Below the pieces are notes generated by a model. It saw only the letters and a list, made by a program, of their open reading frames with translations. It did not search any database and was not told where the DNA came from. The position numbers and the translations under genes are program-made. 64,000 nucleotides of DNA, taken from positions 11,656,001 through 11,720,000 of the forward strand of contig NC_043023.1 of the NCBI RefSeq assembly GCF_006345805.1, given 5' to 3'. The stretch comes from Octopus sinensis (Eukaryota). Shown here in pieces: positions 5,342 to 57,389 of the stretch. Position 1 is the stretch's first letter, and each line of letters starts with the position of its first letter.

Positions 5342-5637
5342 TGTGACATGAGCTGTCAAGCCAGGGTGCTGTTCCAGATTGCAGACAGATTTGGCTGTAT
5401 ACCCTTAAAATACATGGCATAGATTATAAATATCCCTGTTCAAGTATCATAATAGCATGAAACTAGTAGTAGCCCTTTCAATTGTGTATTTAATTTGATA
5501 TATGTATGTGTGTGTTTGAACATGATATCAGTCTGATAACTAAAATAAATGTATACGAATCTTGTATTTGAAGCATACTTCTGAATGGGGCAGAAGCATG
5601 GACTGCCTTCTGCAGACAAATAAGGAAACTTGAAACT
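5342..5637 (+). repeat. 296-bp direct repeat, left copy (target-site duplication)
   Basis: Matches 6923-7218 with 2 mismatches seen. Confidence 0.95.
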
Positions 5638-6922
5638 GCCAGAGATGGTATCAACTGACATACGTAGCACATAATCAACAACAATGAAGAAAAGAAATGG
5701 GGCGTAGGTGTCTCCCTGCAGTATTCCGGCTTTGATTGAGAAAGATGATGTTTCTCTATCAGGGGTTAAGATGGTTGAAGACGTATCTGTGTAGAGGACC
5801 TTGATGGCAGAAATAATTTTGCCTGGTATCCCATAGAGCTTAAGGATTTCAAACATCTTGTACCTATCTACAGAATCGAACGCTTTAGAGAAGTCTACAA
5901 ATACCATTGCAAGATCGCGATTAAATGCTTTTGATTCTTCAATAAGTCTGCGCAGGCATAGTATCTGGCTCAGCATTGAGCGCCCATGTCTGAATCCATT
6001 TTGGTTCTTTCGGAGCAAAGGTTCAATAAAGGACAAGACGATTTAGGATCAGTTTGTTGTACAGTTTTGCAGCAATTGACATTAGAGATATGCCCCTGTA
6101 GTTGGTGACGAGGGACAAATCGCCTTTTTTGGGTATTGGAATGATTTGAGATTGGTGCCAAATCTTTGGAGCGACAAAGGTAGAAAGTGTGTGATTCTCT
6201 CTCCAATGCCCAGTCTCTTTTACAATCTCTTGAACAGGCCTCAAATTGTGTAGGTCTTTACCTCAATGAGGCCAAAACTGAATACATAAACAAGTGCCTG
6301 TCCAACAGTGATTGCATCATCCACACTCTCAACAGTGCACCTTTAAATATGGTTTCTGATTACAAATACCTTGGGTCATACATATCATCATCTGGAAAAG
6401 ACTTTCTAACTAGAAAGGGTATGGCCTGGTCAGCCTGTAATGACATGCATAAGATCTGGTCATCAAATCTAAGTTGAGACTTCAAACTTGAGATATTCAA
6501 AGCCACAGTCGAACCAATTCTACTATATGGCTCAGAAACCTGGACGTTATCAAAGAAGCTTGAGAGGCGGTTGGATGGAACCTACACTCGCCTCCTTATG
6601 AGAGCTCAAAATCTCTCATGGAAGTGCCATCCAACCAAAATGCAAATATATGGGAAATTACCACCTGTGTCATCTCTTGTGAAAGGTAGGAGAGTCCAGT
6701 TTGCTGGACATTGTTGTAGAGCTGAAAAAGAATTAATTTCTACTCTTCTCCTCTGGAAGCCATCTACTCGCAATACCAGAGGGCGCACACTCCTACCCTG
6801 AGGTAGTCTCCAGGGATACAGGCATCCAGCAACAGGACCTCTGTAATGCTATGATGGACCGTGAAGTCTGGCGTAACATAGTAAATTCCATTGTCTCGAC
6901 CACGGTTGAACAATGATGATCA
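5638..6922 (+). mobile_element. 5'-truncated, 5'-inverted RTE-clade LINE
   Basis: The minus strand about 6190->5638 encodes RT (IIPIPKKGD...NYRGISL...FVDFSKAFDSV...GILQGDT); the plus strand about 6190-6915 encodes the RT C-terminus (YKYLGS...LLYGSETW...VQFAGH) ending in a tgatgat tail. Confidence 0.92.
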
Positions 6923-45620: not shown

Positions 45621-46013
45621 TAGATATGTATATCTTTTTGGGGTCCGATAAATTAAGTACCAGTTGTGTACTGTGGTCAATCTGATTGACTAGCCCCGTC
45701 TCCAAGAATTTTTGGGCCTTGTACCTAGAGTAGGAAAAAATATTTCCAATGTTGAATCACTGTATCTTTTAACTATCCTCTTTATCTCACTGGCTCTTTT
45801 TTTCTGTTTCAGAATATTACATCCTGTTGACATAAAAGAAATTACTTCATTCAGACGTGCCTTTGATATTTTTATCAACTTTTATTGACTACAGGAAGAC
45901 GATATATTTATAAGGAGCATTCATCAATACATCAACCTCTTTATATAAAACATATTCATAGGAATTTAAGAGACACTTTAATTGTTGCATGTTCGATAAA
46001 TTATTCTCTGATA

Positions 46014-47205
<1,192 letters not shown>

Positions 47206-49719: not shown

Positions 49720-50894
49720 CATGTGTGTCTTTGTTTGTCCCCCCAACATCGCTTGACAACCAATGCTGGTGTGTTTACGTCCCCGTTACTTAGCGGTTCG
49801 GCAAAAAGACACCGATAGAATAAGTACTAGGCTTACAAAGAATAAGTCCTGGGGTCGATTTGCTCGACTAAAAAAGGTGGTGCTCCAGCATGGCCGCAGT
49901 CAAATGACTGAAACAAGTAAAAGAGTAAAGAGTAAGAGTACACACATATATGCACACTCACATACACGCATCTGTGTTTGTTTGTATGTGTGTGATTTCG
50001 TCAATTCTCTTGCATTTGCTGGGTTTGTAATCAATGCTTTTCCCAGCGATGTCATTTGCTTGATGTCCACCACAAATGCATGTCTGGGCTTCTCGATGTG
50101 TTGCACAATCTTAGTAAACAAAAGGCTCATTTATACAGCGTCATTTGTTAGCACGCCGGGCAAAATGCGTAGCCGTATTTCGTCTGTTGTTTCGTCCCGA
50201 GTTCAAATTCCGCCGAGGTCGACTTTGCCTTTCATCCTTTCGGGGTCGATTAAATAAGTACCAGTTACGCACTGGGGTCGATATAATCGACTTAATCCGT
50301 TTGTCTCTCTATGTTTAGCCCCTTGTGGGTAGTAAAGAATTTGCCTTTCATCCTTTCAGGGTCAATTAAATAAGTACCAGTTGGAAAAGTGGACGTTAGA
50401 ATGTTGTTGATGATGACGATTGATGATTGATTGACGATGATTGATGTTCGATGATGATGGTGATTAATGATGATTGATGATTGATGCTGATGGTTGATGA
50501 TTGATGCTGACGATTGATGATTGATGGTAATTGAGTTGTATAATTATTAAGGATCCGACAGGCTGCAGGACTTTGACAAGATCCAATGACTGAGGAGAGG
50601 GAGAGATAACTGAAGGGAGAGAAAGGCTGTAACCAGTGAAGACAGTGCAGGAAGGGAAGAGGACATAATGGAAATAAGGGATGGGGTTGTTCTGGCAGGG
50701 TGGGGGAAATAAACGGTAATGGAAAGAAAATGGCAAGGAGTAATATGTGACGATTCTGGTTCCAAATGAATACAACCCCTGAGTAGTGCCATAGACAGAT
50801 GAGTGATGGAGAACTGGATGTTAAGGGAAAAAGATGTGGGGAAAGCTTGAGGAGGAAGAAGAATGGCTTACAAGCATAAACAAAATGCATTTTG

Positions 50895-51920
50895 GACATC
50901 ATCTTTTACGGGGATGGACGAGTCTTCTCAATCACTGTGCTTTGTCAATCATCTCAGTCTTTTGTCATCTTTTCAAGTCCAGCATCTTGAGTTCAGCCTT
51001 CACCACTTTATCCCATGTCTTCCTGGGTCTCCCTCTTCAACAAGTTCCATCCACTTAAAGCACTTCTTTAAACAGCTGCCCTCATCCTTATGCATCACAT
51101 CACCAAACCATTGCAGTCTTCTTTTCTGTAGCCTTCATCTGTTTCCTCTTTTGCCTAATTTTTCTCTTGATACTTTAACACTTTCTTTTGTATGTACACT
51201 GTGGAAGCACATGGCCTAGTGGTTAGAGCAGCAGACACGCGGTCAAGGGATCGCTGGTTCGAATCTCAGACCGGCTCCGGCAGAAGGTAATGGCGAAACT
51301 TCTGCTGATTCTTTCGCCACAACTTTCTCTCACTCTTTCCTCCTGCACCTTGCAGCTCACTTGTGATGGACCGGCGTCCCGTCCAGGTGGGGAACCTATA
51401 CGCCAAGAAACCGAGAGACTGGCCCTTATGAGCCAGGCAAGGCTCGAGAAGGAACAAACAAGTATGTACACTGGCATTGCACATCCAAAGGAACATACTA
51501 GCTTTATTCCTCTCTATTCTTTACACATCCTCTGCATTTAGGGCCCATCTCTCACTATCATGTAGCTTTGCTGTTCATACATGAACATCATACAATGTGC
51601 ATTTCATTCTGAGAGAACTTAAGTTGCCCAAGCTGCTTGCTTCTTCAGAGACGACCGTATCATGTCAAAAGCTTTCTGCAGGTCAACGAATACCAATTGC
51701 AATGGTTTACTATTAGCTAAATACATCTCTTGCAGTTGTTTTACTCAGTAGATGGCAGCAGTAGTCCTTCTTCCTGGCAGAAAATCAAACTGCATCTCAT
51801 CTAGTCTAATTCTGTTTCTAATTAATTATAACTTTCTTGACCTGGTCAATCAATTTTAAGGCCTCTCCTTTATGCTTGTAACATCTGACTACAACTTGAT
51901 TTCCTTCTCAAGCCTTCTCA
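50895..51920 (-). mobile_element. Decayed RTE-X-like LINE fragments interrupted by a SINE
   Basis: Minus-strand frames: LDEMQFDFLPGRRTT...VFVDLQKAFD and RRLQWFG...RGRPRKTWDKVVK. Confidence 0.8.
51201..51461 (+). mobile_element. tRNA-derived SINE with an 11-bp TSD
   Basis: A box tggcctagtgg and B box ggttcgaatct; TSD gtatgtacact at 51190-51200 and 51462-51472. Confidence 0.9.
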
Positions 51921-52277
51921 AGCGATGCCAGCTCATAAGGGCCAGTTTTCTGGTTTCAGTGGCATAGAAATTTCTGTACAACTTGATTAACTTTATGGGT
52001 GACAAGGGTGTATCTTACTCTGCACAATCTTAGTAAACAAAAGGTTCGTTTATATGGGGTCGTTTGTTTCCAGTTTACTAGGTAAAACATGACTTGACTC
52101 TTTGCTATTCAATAGATTGGGATATTAGGACAGGAAGAGCATCCAATTGTACACAAGGAAAATGCTGCTCCCAAGTAGGGAAAAGCAGGTGTTAAAATGG
52201 CAATGATGAAAAAAAAAAACCTGAAATTTTTCATATGGGCAACCAATCACTAATGTTGATTTATCTTTTTACTTTAG

Positions 52278-52526
52278 AACCAGATGCATTAGGAGACAAT
52301 GTCACACTTCATACTGAAGTAGCCGAGATGACAGGAATTGTTTTCTGGAAAAACGACAATGGTAGATATGAATGTAACCCGACTTGTTATAATTACGGTA
52401 ACTATGAAGTTACACAAGATGGTAGCAAATCTACTCTTTTGATCCGAATGGTATCAGAACAAGATTTCACTTGGCGTTTTTGTGACTTGTATCTCTGCTC
52501 TGCAAAATATACCTTAGTGACAAAAG
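52278..52526 (+). CDS. Internal exon encoding a divergent Ig-like domain
   Basis: Acceptor ttatctttttactttag|aa and donor aaag|gtaagg, both phase 1; peptide has LGDNVTL, FWK and STLLIRMVSEQD (Ig B/C/E-strand-like motifs) and 4 Cys. Confidence 0.75.
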
Positions 52527-52545
52527 GTAAGGAAATTACTTTTGC

Positions 52546-52547
<2 letters not shown>

Positions 52548-52590
<43 letters not shown>

Positions 52591-52718
52591 TAATAATGGT
52601 AATAATGATAATAATAATGATGATGATGATGATGACGATGACGACGGCGACGACAACGACGGCGACAACAACGACGGCGACGACGACGACGACACTAATA
52701 ATAATAATAATAATAATA
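52548..52718. repeat. Compound (AAT)n/(GAT)n/(GAC)n microsatellite
   Basis: Begins 21 nt after the Ig-exon donor. Confidence 0.95.
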
Positions 52719-53282
52719 GCAGTACCAGGCAGTGGCTCTCATGGCTTCTGATCTTAACTGATTGGAAGTGTTATCATGTACATTGTTTCGTGTTGGTATA
52801 AAAGATGGGCTACAGCAAATATTCTGCTCAATACCACAGATTTGCTTGTCAGTTGTTTGACCTTAACCAGTTGAGCATGACCCTTAGTGGCTGACGATAT
52901 GTGTACCTCTGATCATGAGCAGAAGTAGTGGGGGAGCATCATAGCCATGTGTTGAGAGGGATTCTTTGGGGTTTGAATAATTCACCTCTGGAAACATGGG
53001 TGGTTTTTTCAACATTCTTAAACAACCCTTATTCAGGGACCTTTTGAGCGGGATGGGCTACTCAACCTGAAGAAAATTCTAACTGGGCCCCACCTGCAAG
53101 GTCATGTGCTGTTTATCTTGATCACCATGTCGCGCACATATGGTTGTGATGCATGTGCCTGGTGTACCCTTATCAGACGGGTAGTCATGATGGGTATATT
53201 GGGCTTCGTATATTTTACCCCAGTGTCACTTTGATGGCATGAACTGCTCTCTCACTCAATAATAATAATAATAATAATAATA
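52719..53282 (+). mobile_element. Probable retroposon 3' end with an (AAT)n tail, in the Ig-gene intron
   Basis: Higher-GC block of about 520 bp ending ctctctcactc(aat)n, located beside an AAT microsatellite. Confidence 0.5.
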
Positions 53283-54145
53283 GTTCTTTCTAATTATGGC
53301 ACAAGATCAGGAATTTCATGTGGAAGCGGTTCTTTGATTACATTAATTTGATTATATTTAGTCGGTCCTTTATTTCATCAACCCCAAAGGGATGAAAGGC
53401 AAAGCTGACCTTAGCAGTATTTGAACTCAGGACAGAAAGAGTCAGAAGAAATTCCACTGAACACTTTTTTCTGGTGCAACAACAACAACAACAATAACAA
53501 TAACAACAACAATAATAATAACAACAACAACAACAACCTCAGTGCAAATATTTTTATAATACTTCAGCAAATTCAAAGTTTGTATCACATAGCATTGCTG
53601 TTCATATACAGGCATCATACAATGTGACTTTCACTCTGAGAGAACACTACCCATCCCCTGGTACAAGAATCAAAACCACAATCTTACAATCATGAGTCCA
53701 ACACCCTAACTATTAAGCCACGTGCCTCCACCTAATGCTATATAACCCTTCTAAATAATCGACTCATCTGTTGACCTTACATTTTTGTGTTAGAAAGAAG
53801 AAATTTAATCCCCTTTGCTAATGCAACATAACCTTTCTAATTGATGGATTAATCTGAAGGGGAACATCTAATCATTTTTAGACATAATAATCTGGGATAT
53901 TGTGTGTGTTGATCCGTTTCTTACCATATTTCTGCTGAAATGCATTGCCTTTGTTTCAATAATTTTGGAAATGATAAAGAATCATTACTAAACTATTGTT
54001 TGGAACATAAGGAAGGTTTTCTTTAGATCTCTTCAAAACTGAGGATTTGTACAATAGAAACAAAAACAATTTTAAGCAGGATGGTATGAAAGGGTTAAAC
54101 CTGGCTGATATTACGATTTTCTAAAAATTAAAAACAGAAAGTATA

Positions 54146-54337
54146 TGACGTATATTTGCCATTTAAATATGGCTAACCCCTAAGGGTGGATGCTACTGTA
54201 GTTTGTAGCCCCAGGAGGACACCTCCACTGGCTATAAGCACACTGGCTACAGATGGAGGAGGTGTCCTCCTGGGGCTACAAACTACAGTAGCATCACCCT
54301 TAGGGGTTAGCCATATTTAAATGGCAAATATACGTCA
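54146..54337. repeat. Intronic inverted repeat, about 80-bp arms, 31-nt spacer
   Basis: 54146-54226 versus 54258-54337, with one 1-nt indel. Confidence 0.92.
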
Positions 54338-54422
54338 CGATGTGTTGTAGCTACTGTTTATAACTCGCTTTGAGATTTATTATTGCTTAAAAAGTATATG
54401 TTTTACTGTTCATCTTTTGCAG

Positions 54423-54559
54423 GTGAAAAAACAGAAACGACGACAACAAAAGATGCTGAAACTAATGAATCAGAAGACAGCTTGCCAACCTATGCCTATG
54501 TCTTAATTTTCATATCTGTATTTGTAGCCATCGTTATCATTAAGAAAGGCCAGGAATGA
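54423..54559 (+). CDS. Terminal coding exon: Thr/acidic stalk, TM helix, short tail
   Basis: Acceptor ttcatcttttgcag|gt is phase-compatible with 52526; reads GEKTETTTTKDAETNESEDSLPTYAYVLIFISVFVAIVIIKKGQE*. Confidence 0.75.
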
Positions 54560-55143
54560 TAATGGCCAACCTTATTACTGACTTTCACTGATCCGGGTAG
54601 AATAGTTGGTTTTTGCATAAACTACCTCCATATTTTATGTAACATCATCATCATCGTTGGTTTGGCATCACCTTTTCCAAAACTCTGCTCCATCTTACTC
54701 TTGCTTGTCCAATACAAGCATGGAAAAGCGGACGTTAGAATGTTGTTGTTGATGATGAAAACGATGATATGCGATTGATGATGATAGAGGATAATAATGA
54801 TTGATGGTGATGTCTGATGATTGATGATTATGATTGATGATGATGATTGGTGATGATTGATGATGATGATGATGATGATGATGATAAGATTGATGATGAC
54901 TTCAACTGAAAAACTGTACTTTTTTTCAATCAGTTTTGAAGATGGTGAAGAATTTCGTAAAATAGCTTTGCCATTATTTGGAACATAAATTAACATATAT
55001 TAAACATAAATTAACATAAAATTTTGAATGGAAGGTTTTAATTTTGATCACTTTAACCCTTTTGTTACCATAAACTTATCCTTTACAGGTGCCGGTGGCA
55101 CGTAAAAAGCACACAGCATATTCTGTAGAGTGGTTGGTGCTAG

Positions 55144-55358
55144 GAAAAGGTGGCAAGCTGGCAGAATTGGTAGCATGCCGGATGAAATGCTTAGCAGTAT
55201 TTCGTCTGCCTCTATGTTCTGAGTTCAAATTCCACCGAGGTCGACTTTGCCTTTCATCCTTTTGGAGGTCGACGAAATAAGTACCAGTTATGCACTGGGG
55301 TCAATGTAATTGACTATCCTCCTCCCCCAAATTTCAGGCCTTGTGTCTATAGTAGAAA
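55144..55358 (+). mobile_element. S1 SINE nested in a LINE 3'UTR copy, 12-bp TSD
   Basis: ggttggtgctag at 55132-55143 and 55359-55370. Confidence 0.8.
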
Positions 55359-57389
55359 GGTTGGTGCTAGTAAGGGCATCCGGTTGTAGAAACCATGTGA
55401 CAACAGGCAATTGGAGTCGGGACAGTTTCCCGGATGACCAGATCCTGTCAAACCGTCCAATCCATGCCAGCATGGAAAACGAACTTTGAGCGATGATAAT
55501 GATGATGATGATAATGATGGTGATGATGATGATGATGCTGATAATGATGACGATGACGATGACCTCTGTTGAAGTACACTGCCTTTATTTCAAATGACAT
55601 TGTAAAAACCAACCAGTATCAGTTGTCAAGTTATTTACACATTTCATGTTATCTTCTATCTCTTACTTGCCCCAACACCACTGTGGCCATGCTGGAGCAT
55701 AGCCTTGAGGAATTTTTTGTCAAACAAATCAACCCCAGTTGGGATGAGGTACTGAAGATTGATCTCACAACGCTGAGGTTTCGGAAGGAGATAATATATA
55801 TTTCTATACTACCCACAAGGGGCTAAACACAGAGAGGACAAACAAGGACAGACAACGGATTAAGTCGATTATATCGACCCCAGTGCATAACTGGTACTTA
55901 TTTAATCGACCTCGAAAGGATGAAAGGCAAAGTCGACCTCGGCGGAATTTGAACTCACAACGTAATGGCAGACGAATATACCGCTAAGCATTTCGCCCAG
56001 CGTGCTAATGATTCTGCCAGGTCGCCGCCTTCCAGAAGGAGATAATGAAAGACTGAAATATGTGGTACATTGCTGTAGTCAAGATGACCTACCCACCACC
56101 ACAGAATTAATATCCTAAAACCTTGGTACCACATAAAAAAAACATTGGTGTTGGTACCAGGTAAAATTCACTGGTGCTGGTGCTACGTAAAAAGCACCCA
56201 GTACACTGTAAAGTGGTTGGCATTAGGAAGGGCATCCAGAAGTTTAAGAGGCATGTATGTGTATGTGTGTATATGTATACACACACATACACACATATAT
56301 ATGTGTGTGTGTATGTGTGTAGATGTGGTATGTGTATGTGTGTACACCGTACAACCTGTGAGAACTGACACCTATGTTGACATGTTTACGTCTCCATAAC
56401 TTAGCGGTTCGGTAAAAGAATAAATCCTGGGTCGATTTGTTCGAATAAAGGCGATGCTACAGCATGGCCACAATTGAAGGGGTGAAACAAATAAAAGAAT
56501 ATACATACATACATACATACATACATACATACATACATACATACATACATACATACATACATACATACATACACATACATACACACACACATACATACAT
56601 ACACACATACATACATATATACACACATACATACATACACACATACATACATACATACGCGCACACACACACACACATACATACACACACACACACATAC
56701 ATACATATATATATATATTTAGCAAAAGAGGGAGTGGTGTTTCCAAGCAGGAAAAGAAATATATAGGAAAATGTGTTGCTGAAAATGCACTTAATTTCGA
56801 GACCTCTACCATAACAAATGCTTGTGTGTGTTACCAAGAAATTTATAGAGAGTGAGAAAAAAAAAGACTTCTAAGCAAACAATTGTAGACTTGTGTTTTA
56901 AAAAGAAATCTACAAGTCTGTCTACGAGTGCTTGTGAATCGGTGATCACATTTTCAAGTGATGGTGTGCGTGAGTCTATGCGAGTGACAGTGATTCAGAA
57001 AACAATTCTAATAATAATACTTCTTATTATAAATGATCTCAACATTCTTTTTACTTTACATAAAATATTCTTTACATTCTGCTGTTGTTTTACTGTCATT
57101 TATTTACAAGTATTATAAATTTTATTGGTAAAATATTTTTCTGGGAACGACTTATAACCTTGCTATTATGGGAAAGTTCTCGCTTTACGAGCGATCTCTG
57201 GGACCAAATTACCTTGTATATTGAGGCATTACTGTATATACCTCCCTACCTCCCTACATTCATATATATATATACACACACAACACACGTCACGTATCCT
57301 CTTCCAAGTAAGTTTTTGTATATATATTATGTGTGTGTGTGGATATATATTAATGTGTGTGTGCATATATATATATATATATATGTATG

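What the first reader, a model, noticed from the sequence alone, without database searches (positions are those of the whole stretch)
52278..54559. Small Ig-like type I membrane protein embedded in the ZNF cluster
Seen: two phase-1-compatible exons with strong splice sites give about 128 aa. These comprise an Ig-like segment (LGDNVTL, FWK, STLLIRMVSEQD) lacking the canonical B-strand Cys and DxGxYxC but carrying two close Cys pairs (ECNPTC, FCDLYLC), a Thr/Glu stalk, a hydrophobic run YAYVLIFISVFVAIVII, a KK stop-transfer and a 5-residue tail. The ORF track hides the gene by reading into a microsatellite. Inference: a lineage-specific adhesion, decoy or recognition receptor with no signalling tail. 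I did not find a signal-peptide exon.
Basis: partly seen in the sequence, partly recalled or inferred. Interest (0 to 1): 0.72.

Follow-up and report, generated by a model that had tools for sequence, protein, structure and literature searches.

The report
Degraded octopus Ig-like membrane gene copy
The two exons are real and encode a small Ig-fold membrane protein already annotated (uncharacterised, truncated) in Octopus sinensis, but this copy is a young duplicate that has lost its original 5' end and shows almost no sign of selection, so it is an ordinary, probably decaying member of an uncharacterised mollusc Ig-like family.

Summary
Exons 52278-52526 and 54423-54559 have the stated splice sites, phases and peptide. 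The window is 100% identical to Octopus sinensis CM016885.1, and the feature is NCBI gene LOC115225077, annotated from an internal Met.

The "Ig-like" reading is supported:
- The domain matches octopod and abalone multi-repeat membrane proteins (E 1e-39 to 1e-25) and obscurin Ig domains (about 1e-5).
- AlphaFold gives a confident beta-sandwich.
- Foldseek's top hits that I identified (obscurin, titin, MyBP-C, antibody V domains, nanobodies) are Ig domains.
- Both canonical Ig cysteines are absent. The family signature is W...CxxxC...STLxI...W.F.D.

This locus is a degraded duplicate. It is one of at least 8 copies in two species, spread as a roughly 7-kb unit through the C2H2-ZNF cluster.
- It lacks the 39-nt A-strand mini-exon and the leader exon that some paralogs keep.
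- Its conserved start codon (52197) is out of frame, leaving an 18-codon uORF. Only a short 14-residue leader from ATG 52235 remains.
- Among the copies, 20 nonsynonymous and 7 synonymous sites vary, which is the neutral ratio. All ORFs and splice sites are nevertheless intact.

Verdict: a real gene copy and a new member of a known kind. Function at this locus is doubtful. Interest is low to moderate.

The parts
52278..52526 (+). Ig-like domain exon (strands A' to G), phase 1 at both ends. Acceptor AG at 52276-52277, donor GT at 52527-52528.
   Evidence: Sequence and translation. phmmer hits to octopod and abalone repeat proteins and to obscurin Ig domains. AF2 beta-sandwich and Foldseek Ig hits. 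Intact in 8 loci.
54423..54559 (+). Second exon: Thr/Glu-rich stalk with an NES sequon, TM helix YAYVLIFISVFVAIVII (54491-54541), KKGQE tail (54542-54556), TGA stop (54557-54559).
   Evidence: Kyte-Doolittle 19-residue window maximum of 2.45. AF2 helix at residues 120-141. The TM exon resembles that of relative P0019 (IPTYAKVLIAVLCLVAILII).
52235..52277 (+). In-frame ATG and 14-residue hydrophobic leader (MGNQSLMLIYLFTL), contiguous with the Ig exon. A weak candidate signal peptide or signal anchor.
   Evidence: ORF list. ATG and leader are kept in all 8 loci. NCBI uses it as the CDS start for paralogs LOC115231351 and LOC118768178. The hydrophobic run is only 10 residues, against 12-18 in relatives' signal peptides. 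Low pLDDT.
52197..52253 (+). Conserved start codon in a strong context (GTTAAAATGGCA; the strength judgement is from my general knowledge of start-codon contexts). It is out of frame with the Ig ORF here and gives an 18-codon uORF, MAMMKKKNLKFFIWATNH*. The frame depends on the A11CC run at 52209-52221.
   Evidence: Translation. In frame only in paralog L004 (A11CCC). The O. vulgaris ortholog L007 has the same total length (A10CCC). The ATG context is conserved in a distant octopod contig, L009, while its flanks cannot be aligned.
52328..52330 (+). Internal Met (MTGIVFWK) that NCBI uses as the CDS start of LOC115225077. A product starting here would lack the leader and strands A'/B.
   Evidence: P0013 is 111 aa. 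Its CDS range in L003 (10001-12232) maps to window 52328-54559, and the window is 100% identical to L003.
52527..54422 (+). Intron. Its first roughly 26 nt (GTAAGGAAATTACTTTTGCTAAT) are conserved across old paralogs. Then come microsatellites (52546-52693, 53258-53282, 53477-53537) and a 192-bp palindrome (54146-54337).
   Evidence: The read-through peptides GKEITSANNNNNNSF in O. bimaculoides models P0021 and P0028, and the variant GKFMISANNNNNNSF in P0035.
52054..52081 (+). 28-nt ATG-containing mini-exon (MGSFVSSLL, donor G|gtaaaa). The O. vulgaris annotation uses it for the ortholog. It lies in a repeat fragment, so it is probably an annotation artefact.
   Evidence: Translation. P0009 model. 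Direct repeat D11, 50102-50149 versus 52021-52068.
50382..57300 (.). Roughly 7-kb duplication unit shared at about 92-97% identity with 6 paralogous loci. Its left edge abuts SINE-like repeats.
   Evidence: blastn against L001, L002, L004, L005, L006 and L008. No TIR or LTR at the ends.

Best explanation
Shown:
- The feature is the two-exon body of Octopus sinensis gene LOC115225077: an Ig-like domain exon followed by a stalk/TM/tail exon.
- The domain is a divergent immunoglobulin-superfamily domain, closest to I-set, with no canonical B-F disulfide. A family-specific CxxxC pair and, in this membrane-proximal subtype, an FCDxxxC pair are present.
- It belongs to an uncharacterised mollusc family, expanded in octopods, of membrane proteins built as signal peptide, 1-5 such domains, a TM helix and a short tail.
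- The window copy is one of at least 5 O. sinensis copies. The 6 paralogous loci differ from it by 0.8-4% in substitutions in exon 1 and the 1 kb upstream (up to 5.8% in exon 2). The copies are spread as a roughly 7-kb unit within the C2H2-ZNF cluster, and in the locus data this copy lies within the span of a 1146-aa minus-strand gene.

Inferred:
- The copy is 5'-degraded. The 39-nt A-strand mini-exon and the leader exon kept by some paralogs are absent. The conserved start codon is frameshifted into a uORF. Both changes are shared with the O. vulgaris ortholog.
- If a protein is made, it is the 142-aa product from ATG 52235. It would have a weak leader, an N-glycosylated Ig-like ectodomain, an O-glycosylatable stalk, one TM helix and a 5-residue tail.
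- Such a product could only bind or present something at a membrane. It could not signal by itself.
- The substitution pattern among copies is neutral. The most likely state of this locus is a transcribed, slowly decaying or functionally redundant duplicate, not a dedicated receptor.
For: Identity: the window is 100% identical to L003. P0013 is LOC115225077.

Ig homology and fold:
- phmmer E = 1e-39 to 1e-25 to octopod and Haliotis repeat proteins, and 1e-6 to 1e-5 to amphioxus and obscurin Ig arrays.
- Haliotis relative P0020 passes Pfam I-set, 56.8 bits against a cut-off of 23.7.
- The family profile hits titin and obscurin in the PDB.
- AF2 pLDDT is at least 90 over about 80 residues for paralog P0001, and 86-96 over the core of the window's own product.
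- Foldseek's top hits that I identified (obscurin, titin, MyBP-C, antibody V domains, nanobodies) are Ig domains.

Family architecture and invariants.

Duplication unit and ortholog.

5' degradation:
- The mini-exon and leader exon are absent.
- The mini-exon is 97.6-100% conserved, with its splice sites, in L001, L005, L006 and L008.
- The start codon is frameshifted, although its context is conserved in the distant contig L009.

Neutrality:
- 27 variable coding sites, 20 nonsynonymous and 7 synonymous. The neutral expectation is 25% synonymous (p = 0.55).
- Exon 2 is no more conserved than non-coding DNA (p = 0.76).
- No protein from Logan run assemblies turned up for this subfamily among 5.8 billion proteins. 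Relatives P0027 and P0030 do come from Logan assemblies.
Against: - All 8 copies keep open reading frames, all splice sites and the in-frame ATG with its leader.
- Exon 1 has fewer variable sites than the 1 kb upstream: 6.0% against 10.6%, Fisher p = 0.03.
- There are no frameshifting indels in 386 nt across 8 copies. The upstream kb has about 9 internal indel events.
- None of the nearly invariant family residues is hit.
- NCBI lists three isoforms. In my understanding of NCBI's pipeline that usually implies transcript evidence.
- A dN/dS near 1 on 27 sites has little power. It is also what diversifying selection on a surface receptor would give.
- Simulation: under neutrality, the chance of seeing no stop or splice-site hit is still 0.18 for 27 substitutions. 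Intactness therefore decides little either way.
Confidence: 0.6

Rival explanations
1. This is a functional, lineage-restricted single-Ig surface protein, essentially the first reader's view. The 142-aa product from ATG 52235, or a product using unseen 5' exons, enters the ER and sits in the plasma membrane as an adhesion, recognition or decoy molecule. The near-neutral dN/dS reflects diversifying selection among young paralogs.
For: - Intact ORFs, splice sites and in-frame ATG and leader in all 8 copies in two species.
- Exon 1 is less variable than its flank, p = 0.03.
- Confident Ig fold for the window's own product.
- N-glycosylation sequons and a mucin-like stalk.
- Relatives with clear signal peptides and the same TM exon type.
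Against: - The ancestral start is out of frame, with a strong-context uORF overlapping ATG 52235.
- The leader's hydrophobic run is only 10 residues, with no charged n-region.
- The A-strand mini-exon is deleted here, yet strongly conserved in other copies.
- The synonymous-to-nonsynonymous ratio is neutral, and exon 2 is unconstrained.
- NCBI's own model starts at an internal Met that would destroy the domain.
Confidence: 0.3
2. The two exons are the 3' terminal exons of a larger multi-domain gene whose upstream Ig-domain and leader exons lie elsewhere, as in paralog LOC115225463, where the first exon is 9.9 kb upstream.
For: - Acceptor use at the equivalent of 52277/52278 is modelled in four paralog or ortholog annotations.
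- Family relatives have 2-5 domains.
- NCBI's internal-Met CDS suggests that upstream non-coding exons splice into 52278 (inference).
Against: - tblastn with 20 family proteins finds no other family exon anywhere in the 64-kb window. That covers 52 kb upstream and 9.4 kb downstream.
- The leader and mini-exon sequences of L001 have no counterpart in the window.
- The intervening DNA is ZNF genes on both strands.
Confidence: 0.07
3. It is a chance ORF with chance splice-like sites, or cargo of a transposable element, and not a host gene.
For: - An open frame of about 97 codons is not rare in 36% GC DNA.
- The copies are dispersed as a discrete roughly 7-kb unit edged by SINE-like repeats.
- An RT-like motif lies about 550 bp upstream on the minus strand.
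Against: - Strong homology to a protein family in several species and in a second mollusc class.
- Confident Ig fold.
- No terminal inverted or long terminal repeats at the unit's ends, and no transposase or RT ORF inside it.
Confidence: 0.03

Closest known systems
Muscle-type I-set Ig domains (obscurin, titin, twitchin, MyBP-C)
   Same: - They are the best structural matches: 2dm7, 2yz8, 2edw, 8ovu, 1koa, 2mq3, with TM-score 0.5-0.66 normalised to the target.
- They are the only solved-structure sequence matches of the family profile (titin, E = 8e-4).
- The single-sequence search reaches obscurin Ig repeats at about 1e-5.
- Like many of these domains, this one has no structural disulfide (general knowledge).
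   Different: - Those are intracellular tandem domains of giant muscle proteins. This one is an extracellular-type domain with N-glycosylation sequons, a CxxxC pair, a stalk and a TM helix.
- The DxGxYxC motif is replaced by D-F-T-W-R-F.
- Pfam I-set does not score the window protein.
Uncharacterised octopod and abalone 'CxxxC' Ig-like repeat membrane proteins (O. sinensis LOC115225115, LOC115225395, LOC115229017; the LOC115231405-like O. vulgaris protein CAI9744053; O. bimaculoides LOC106867739, LOC106871836; Argonauta hians GAB1602345; Haliotis rufescens LOC124119024)
   Same: - Clear homologs, 34-48% identity.
- The same invariants: W, CxxxC, STLxI, W, D.
- The membrane-proximal domain subtype FCDxxxC, a stalk and a TM exon beginning (I/L)PTYA are shared with P0018, P0019, P0021 and P0030.
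- The same intron start, GKEIT.ANNN.
   Different: - Relatives have a 12-18-residue hydrophobic signal peptide, a 39-nt A-strand mini-exon per domain and usually 2-5 domains. Some have longer tails.
- The window copy has one domain, no mini-exon, a frameshifted start and a 5-residue tail.
Small single-Ig membrane proteins without signalling tails (for example Thy-1/CD90; CD79b is a structural hit)
   Same: One Ig-like ectodomain held at the membrane with essentially no cytoplasmic part. This is the 'works like' analogy for a binding or co-receptor subunit. It rests on my general knowledge. CD79b (3kho) is among the Foldseek hits.
   Different: - Thy-1 is GPI-anchored and keeps the canonical disulfide.
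- CD79b has an ITAM tail.
- There is no sequence relationship beyond the fold.
- The anchoring mode here (TM or GPI) was not tested.

Membership tests
Immunoglobulin superfamily (Ig-like beta-sandwich) | Two-sheet beta-sandwich of about 7-9 strands with Ig topology | tested here: met
   AF2 gives 7 strands. pLDDT is at least 90 over 80 residues for paralog P0001 and 86-96 over the core of the window product. Foldseek against the PDB gives 103 and 62 hits at E <= 1e-3. The top hits that I identified (obscurin, titin, MyBP-C, antibody V domains, nanobodies) are Ig domains; I did not check every listed entry.
Immunoglobulin superfamily (Ig-like beta-sandwich) | Match to a curated Ig profile (Pfam I-set, ig, Ig_3 or V-set) at the gathering score | tested here: not met
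   The window protein has no Ig family even at E <= 10. Relatives P0017 and P0018 are just below the cut-off (23.6 and 21.7 bits against 23.7). Haliotis relative P0020 passes (56.8 bits). Homology is therefore transitive, plus direct phmmer hits to obscurin at about 1e-5.
Immunoglobulin superfamily (Ig-like beta-sandwich) | Canonical B-strand/F-strand cysteine pair and the DxGxYxC motif | tested here: not met
   In family alignment A2 the B-strand position is T/I (TLHT). The F-strand position is F/I (W-R-F), and W replaces Y. Many I-set domains also lack the disulfide, so this does not exclude the fold.
Immunoglobulin superfamily (Ig-like beta-sandwich) | Conserved C-strand Trp, and a domain encoded by a phase 1-1 exon | tested here: met
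   The W of FWK is invariant in 37 sequences. Exon phases were read directly.
Octopod/abalone CxxxC Ig-like repeat membrane protein family (unnamed) | Domain signature W...C-x3-C...S-T-L-x-I...W-x-F-x-D, with significant sequence homology | tested here: met
   All the invariant and nearly invariant positions are present in the window domain. E = 1e-39 to 1e-12 to family members.
Octopod/abalone CxxxC Ig-like repeat membrane protein family (unnamed) | N-terminal signal peptide and a 39-nt A-strand/linker mini-exon (x-Y-x-I-x-Q) before each domain exon | tested here: not met
   Neither the leader exon nor the mini-exon of L001 is in the window. The in-frame stretch upstream of the acceptor does not match the linker profile. 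Only a 10-residue hydrophobic run follows ATG 52235.
Octopod/abalone CxxxC Ig-like repeat membrane protein family (unnamed) | C-terminal stalk, single TM helix and short tail on a separate exon | tested here: met
   Exon 2. KD19 = 2.45 and an AF2 helix. Its TM exon resembles that of P0019.
Type I membrane protein | Cleavable signal peptide that directs the N-terminus to the lumen | not testable with these tools
   No SignalP or DeepTMHMM was available. By simple measures the leader is short and lacks a charged n-region. Type III insertion or a GPI anchor cannot be excluded.
Duplicated (unprocessed) pseudogene | Loss of parts present in the parent gene, or disabling changes | tested here: inconclusive
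   Lost: the mini-exon, the leader exon and the frame of the conserved ATG. The Ig/TM ORF and its splice sites are intact.
Duplicated (unprocessed) pseudogene | Neutral substitution pattern (dN/dS about 1, exon rate equal to intron rate) | tested here: inconclusive
   20 nonsynonymous against 7 synonymous sites equals the neutral expectation (p = 0.55), and exon 2 matches its flank (p = 0.76). Exon 1 is less variable than its flank (p = 0.03). Power is low.
Dilysine (KKXX / KXKXX) ER-retrieval membrane proteins | Lys at position -3 and at -4 or -5 from the C-terminus | tested here: not met
   The tail is ...KKGQE. The lysines are at -4 and -5 and Gly is at -3. The motif definition is from my own knowledge.

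The most novel reading that the evidence does not exclude
The young single-domain copies, including this one, are a functional and rapidly diversifying octopod surface-recognition family riding on the ZNF-cluster duplications. On this reading the dN/dS near 1 is diversifying selection, not decay. The ultra-conserved first roughly 26 nt of the intron (read through as GKEIT.ANNN...) would be a switch between a membrane-bound and a secreted isoform by intron retention.
Probability: 0.15. Interest if true: 0.6.

Novelty: new member of a known kind. Interest (0 to 1): 0.3.

Why it matters
For this locus, little is at stake. It corrects an annotation: the NCBI CDS starts inside the Ig domain, and the O. 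vulgaris model uses a repeat-derived mini-exon. It also shows that the copy is a 5'-degraded duplicate.

At the family level there is modest value. Octopods and abalone share an unnamed Ig-like domain subtype, with a CxxxC pair, no canonical disulfide and W in place of Y. It is built into signal-peptide/TM proteins with 1-5 repeats, has no Pfam model and has no literature that I could find. Its membrane-proximal module has been copied repeatedly within the cephalopod C2H2-ZNF cluster. That makes it a small, clean case for studying how partial gene duplicates live or die. It is also a candidate new Pfam family.

Tried and rejected
- Pfam on the window protein gave nothing useful. The only hit was LRRC37AB_C at E = 0.097.
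- A profile search of the 5.8-billion-protein collection with the family alignment returned only the near-identical subfamily and added nothing.
- Look-ups of isoforms P0004 and P0006 found nothing, because only the longest product of each gene is indexed.
- I considered that the in-frame stretch upstream of the acceptor (EIFHMGNQSLMLIYLFTL) is a relic of the previous domain's G strand, linker and A strand, as tblastn extensions suggested. A linker profile scores it no better than shuffles: 1651 of 2000 shuffles score at least as high. Rejected.
- I looked for TE termini around the roughly 7-kb unit. I found only SINE-like repeats and microsatellites, with no TIR or LTR.
- I checked the tail as a KKXX ER-retrieval signal. 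The spacing is wrong.
- I searched the literature for the LOC identifiers and for octopus Ig-superfamily expansions. There were no hits on this family.
- A GPI anchor in place of a TM helix could not be tested.
Full report
**What is there.** Reading the window directly confirms the finding's anatomy.
- Exon 1 is 52278-52526: acceptor tttttactttag|AA, donor AAAAG|gtaagg, 249 nt, phase 1 at both ends.
- Exon 2 is 54423-54559: acceptor ttttgcag|GT, ending in TGA.
- Spliced, they encode (E)PDALGDNVTLHTEVAEMTGIVFWKNDNGRYECNPTCYNYGNYEVTQDGSKSTLLIRMVSEQDFTWRFCDLYLCSAKYTLVTKG/EKTETTTTKDAETNESEDSLPT/YAYVLIFISVFVAIVII/KKGQE*.
- The surroundings are a C2H2 zinc-finger cluster on both strands, with a LINE reverse-transcriptase fragment.

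**Where it comes from and what is annotated.** The spliced peptide finds only Octopus sinensis and O. vulgaris proteins in the 5.8-billion-protein collection.
- The window is 100% identical over 7 kb to O. sinensis CM016885.1 at about 11.70 Mb (locus L003).
- The feature is NCBI gene LOC115225077, 'uncharacterized protein', isoforms X1-X3.
- NCBI's CDS of 111 aa starts at the internal Met of MTGIVFWK (window 52328). A product starting there would lack strands A'/B and any leader.
- In the locus data the gene lies within the span of a 1146-aa gene on the opposite strand.

**Paralogs and ortholog.** Seven more loci were fetched: four from O. sinensis (LOC115225463, LOC115231351, LOC118768178, LOC118768220) and three from O. 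vulgaris.
- L007 of O. vulgaris is colinear with window 40667-64000 and is the ortholog.
- The other six share a unit spanning roughly window 50382-57300 at about 92-97% identity. The neighbouring ZNF arrays are only about 75% identical.
- No terminal repeats mark the unit as a transposon.

**Is it Ig-like? Yes.**
- Pfam does not recognise the window protein.
- An exhaustive phmmer search of 1.84 billion representatives with the exon-1 peptide gives 35 hits.
- The strong hits are uncharacterised proteins from O. sinensis, O. vulgaris, O. bimaculoides, Argonauta hians and the abalones Haliotis rufescens and H. cracherodii. Several carry the domain 2-5 times, typically between a signal peptide and a TM helix with a short tail.
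- Weaker but significant hits are Ig arrays of amphioxus and coelacanth obscurin (E about 1e-6 to 1e-5).
- The abalone relative passes Pfam I-set (56.8 bits). Two octopus relatives fall just under the cut-off.
- The family profile finds titin and obscurin among solved structures.
- AlphaFold2 with a 37-row family alignment gives a seven-strand sandwich with pLDDT of at least 90 over 80 residues for paralog P0001. For the window's own 142-aa product the core blocks score 86-96.
- Foldseek's top hits that I identified are Ig domains. These include obscurin, titin, twitchin and MyBP-C I-set domains, antibody V domains and nanobodies, sDscam and CD79b.

**Family signature.** Invariant or nearly invariant residues are the C-strand Trp, a C-x3-C pair (ECNPTC here, TCNPSC in abalone), S-T-L-x-I, a Trp where Ig domains have the Tyr of DxGxYxC, and an Asp.
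- Both canonical cysteines are absent: T/I in strand B and F/I in strand F.
- FCDLYLC is the mark of the membrane-proximal domain subtype (compare P0018 domain 3, P0019, P0021 and P0030).
- Distal domains carry a different pair (WKC...KEC).

**The 5' end.** Annotations disagree.
- LOC115225463 and its O. vulgaris counterpart use a short leader exon (MSVFIYL/C) 9.9 kb upstream, plus a 39-nt phase 1-1 mini-exon (LARTESYNISQS) 2 kb upstream.
- That mini-exon matches the family's linker/A-strand motif (x-Y-x-I-x-Q; E = 2e-4 against a linker profile).
- The same kind of 13-residue unit is what differs between isoforms of LOC115225115.
- The mini-exon, with its splice sites, is 97.6-100% identical in L001, L005, L006 and L008. 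The surrounding 335 nt are only 87-91% identical. It appears constrained there.
- It is absent from the window, from the ortholog L007, and from L002 and L004. The leader exon is found only in L001 and L006.
- No other family exon exists anywhere in the 64-kb window.

**A second kind of 5' end lies in the Ig exon itself.**
- All eight loci keep an in-frame ATG 14 codons before the acceptor. In the window this is 52235, MGNQSLMLIYLFTL.
- NCBI uses it for LOC115231351. For LOC118768178 NCBI uses an ATG 13 codons further upstream (MAMMKKKNPEIFHMGNQ...).
- A genomic contig from a distant octopod (L009; exon about 62% identical at the nucleotide level, flanks not alignable) keeps three non-exonic islands: GGGAAAA.AGG.GTTAAA(T)ATGGCAATG, the polypyrimidine tract and AG, and the first roughly 26 nt of the intron. 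Its ORF starts MAMLVMKEEIPDVPKPINIIILTLYLSISG, a credible signal peptide.
- The MAM codon is therefore probably the ancestral start of this single-domain gene type.
- In the window that ATG (52197) is out of frame: A11CC here against A11CCC in L004. It yields an 18-codon uORF that overlaps ATG 52235.
- The O. vulgaris ortholog has the same total length (A10CCC). The frameshift therefore looks real and older than the species split.
- What remains is a leader with a 10-residue hydrophobic run and no charged n-region. Relatives' signal peptides have runs of 12-18 residues.
- The O. vulgaris model's MGSFVSSLL mini-exon (window 52054-52081) sits in a repeat fragment and is probably an artefact.

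**Selection.** All eight copies have open frames and intact splice sites.
- Across 381 aligned coding sites, 27 vary: 20 nonsynonymous and 7 synonymous. This equals the neutral expectation of 25% synonymous (binomial p = 0.55).
- The ortholog pair differs by 3 nonsynonymous and 2 synonymous changes.
- Exon 1 has fewer variable columns than the 1 kb upstream (15/249 against 103/970, p = 0.03). Exon 2 does not (12/132, p = 0.76).
- The only coding indel is an in-frame 24-nt duplication in L006. The upstream kb has about 9 internal indel events.
- Simulation gives P = 0.18 for no stop or splice-site hit with 27 neutral substitutions.
- Taken together there is at most weak constraint. The data cannot separate slow decay from diversifying selection.

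**Mechanism.**
- Shown: an Ig-fold ectodomain with NVT and NES sequons, a Thr/Glu-rich stalk, one TM helix (KD19 = 2.45; AF2 helix), KK and a 5-residue tail.
- Inferred: if the 142-aa product is made and inserted, it can only act by binding at the membrane, as an adhesion, co-receptor or decoy subunit. It cannot signal alone.
- The KKGQE tail does not fit the KKXX rule.
- TM helix versus GPI anchoring, and signal-peptide cleavage, could not be tested.
- Given the lost mini-exon and leader, the frameshifted start, the neutral pattern, the inconsistent gene models and the lack of any Logan-derived protein for this subfamily, I judge this locus more likely a transcribed, decaying or redundant duplicate (about 0.6) than a dedicated receptor (about 0.3).
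- LOC115225463 and its O. vulgaris counterpart look like the most complete copies.

**Comparison and novelty.** The domain works like, and is distantly related to, I-set Ig domains. It is a member of an unnamed mollusc family with no Pfam model and no literature that I could find. The gene itself is already in RefSeq. I therefore file it as a new member of a known kind, of low to moderate interest.

**Most novel reading not excluded.** A diversifying octopod receptor family with an intron-retention switch between secreted and membrane forms. I put this at about 0.15.

Noticed in passing
window 52527-52552 and the following (AAT)n at 52546-52618: The first roughly 26 nt of the intron (GTAAGGAAATTACTTTTGCTAAT) are 25/26 identical to a distant octopod contig whose exon is only about 62% identical. 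The same read-through peptide, GKEITSANNNNNNSF, ends O. bimaculoides models P0021 and P0028, and P0035 ends in the variant GKFMISANNNNNNSF. This may be a splicing element or an alternative secreted C-terminus. Unexplained.
   Followed up: partly
window 54146-54337: A 192-bp near-perfect palindrome lies in the intron, with 43-nt arms 100% complementary and inner 49-nt arms 90% complementary. It looks like a foldback or MITE element and is also present in paralog loci. In the O. vulgaris ortholog the 577 bp just to its left (53574-54150) are missing.
   Followed up: partly
window 52197-52253: An 18-codon uORF (MAMMKKKNLKFFIWATNH*) starts at a conserved, strong-context ATG. Its frame relative to the Ig ORF is set by a homopolymer (A11CC) whose length differs among all 8 copies. 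Only LOC118768178 keeps the long MAMM... leader in frame.
   Followed up: yes
window 45885-46541 and 46489-47205 (+): Two overlapping C2H2-ZNF ORFs in different frames look like one zinc-finger array split by a frameshift. This could be a ZNF pseudogene or an assembly error.
   Followed up: no
window 5440-6036 (-) and 51619-51726 (-): There are reverse-transcriptase fragments here. The first is Pfam RVT_1 at E = 9e-13. The second has only the ...VFVDLQKAFD... motif, about 550 bp upstream of the Ig exon. Both look like LINE remnants within the ZNF cluster.
   Followed up: partly
window 50145-50340, 55167-55315, 55854-55976: Copies of a SINE-like repeat occur in direct and inverted orientation (83-93% identical). 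One sits at the left edge of the roughly 7-kb duplication unit. The 28-nt MGSFVSSLL 'exon' of the O. vulgaris model (52054-52081) lies in a related repeat fragment.
   Followed up: partly
L001 17880-17918; L005, L006 and L008 equivalents: A 39-nt phase 1-1 mini-exon (LARTESYNISQS, the A strand of the Ig domain) is 97.6-100% conserved in four paralog loci although its surroundings are 87-91% identical. Isoforms of LOC115225115 differ by exactly one such 13-residue unit (FSSANIYKITQSG). The family appears to encode each A strand on its own mini-exon.
   Followed up: partly
window 42328-64000 (locus L003) and locus L005: A single 1146-aa gene model on the minus strand spans both the window locus and the LOC118768220 locus more than 200 kb away. 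Two of the Ig/TM copies therefore lie within the span of one very long gene.
   Followed up: no
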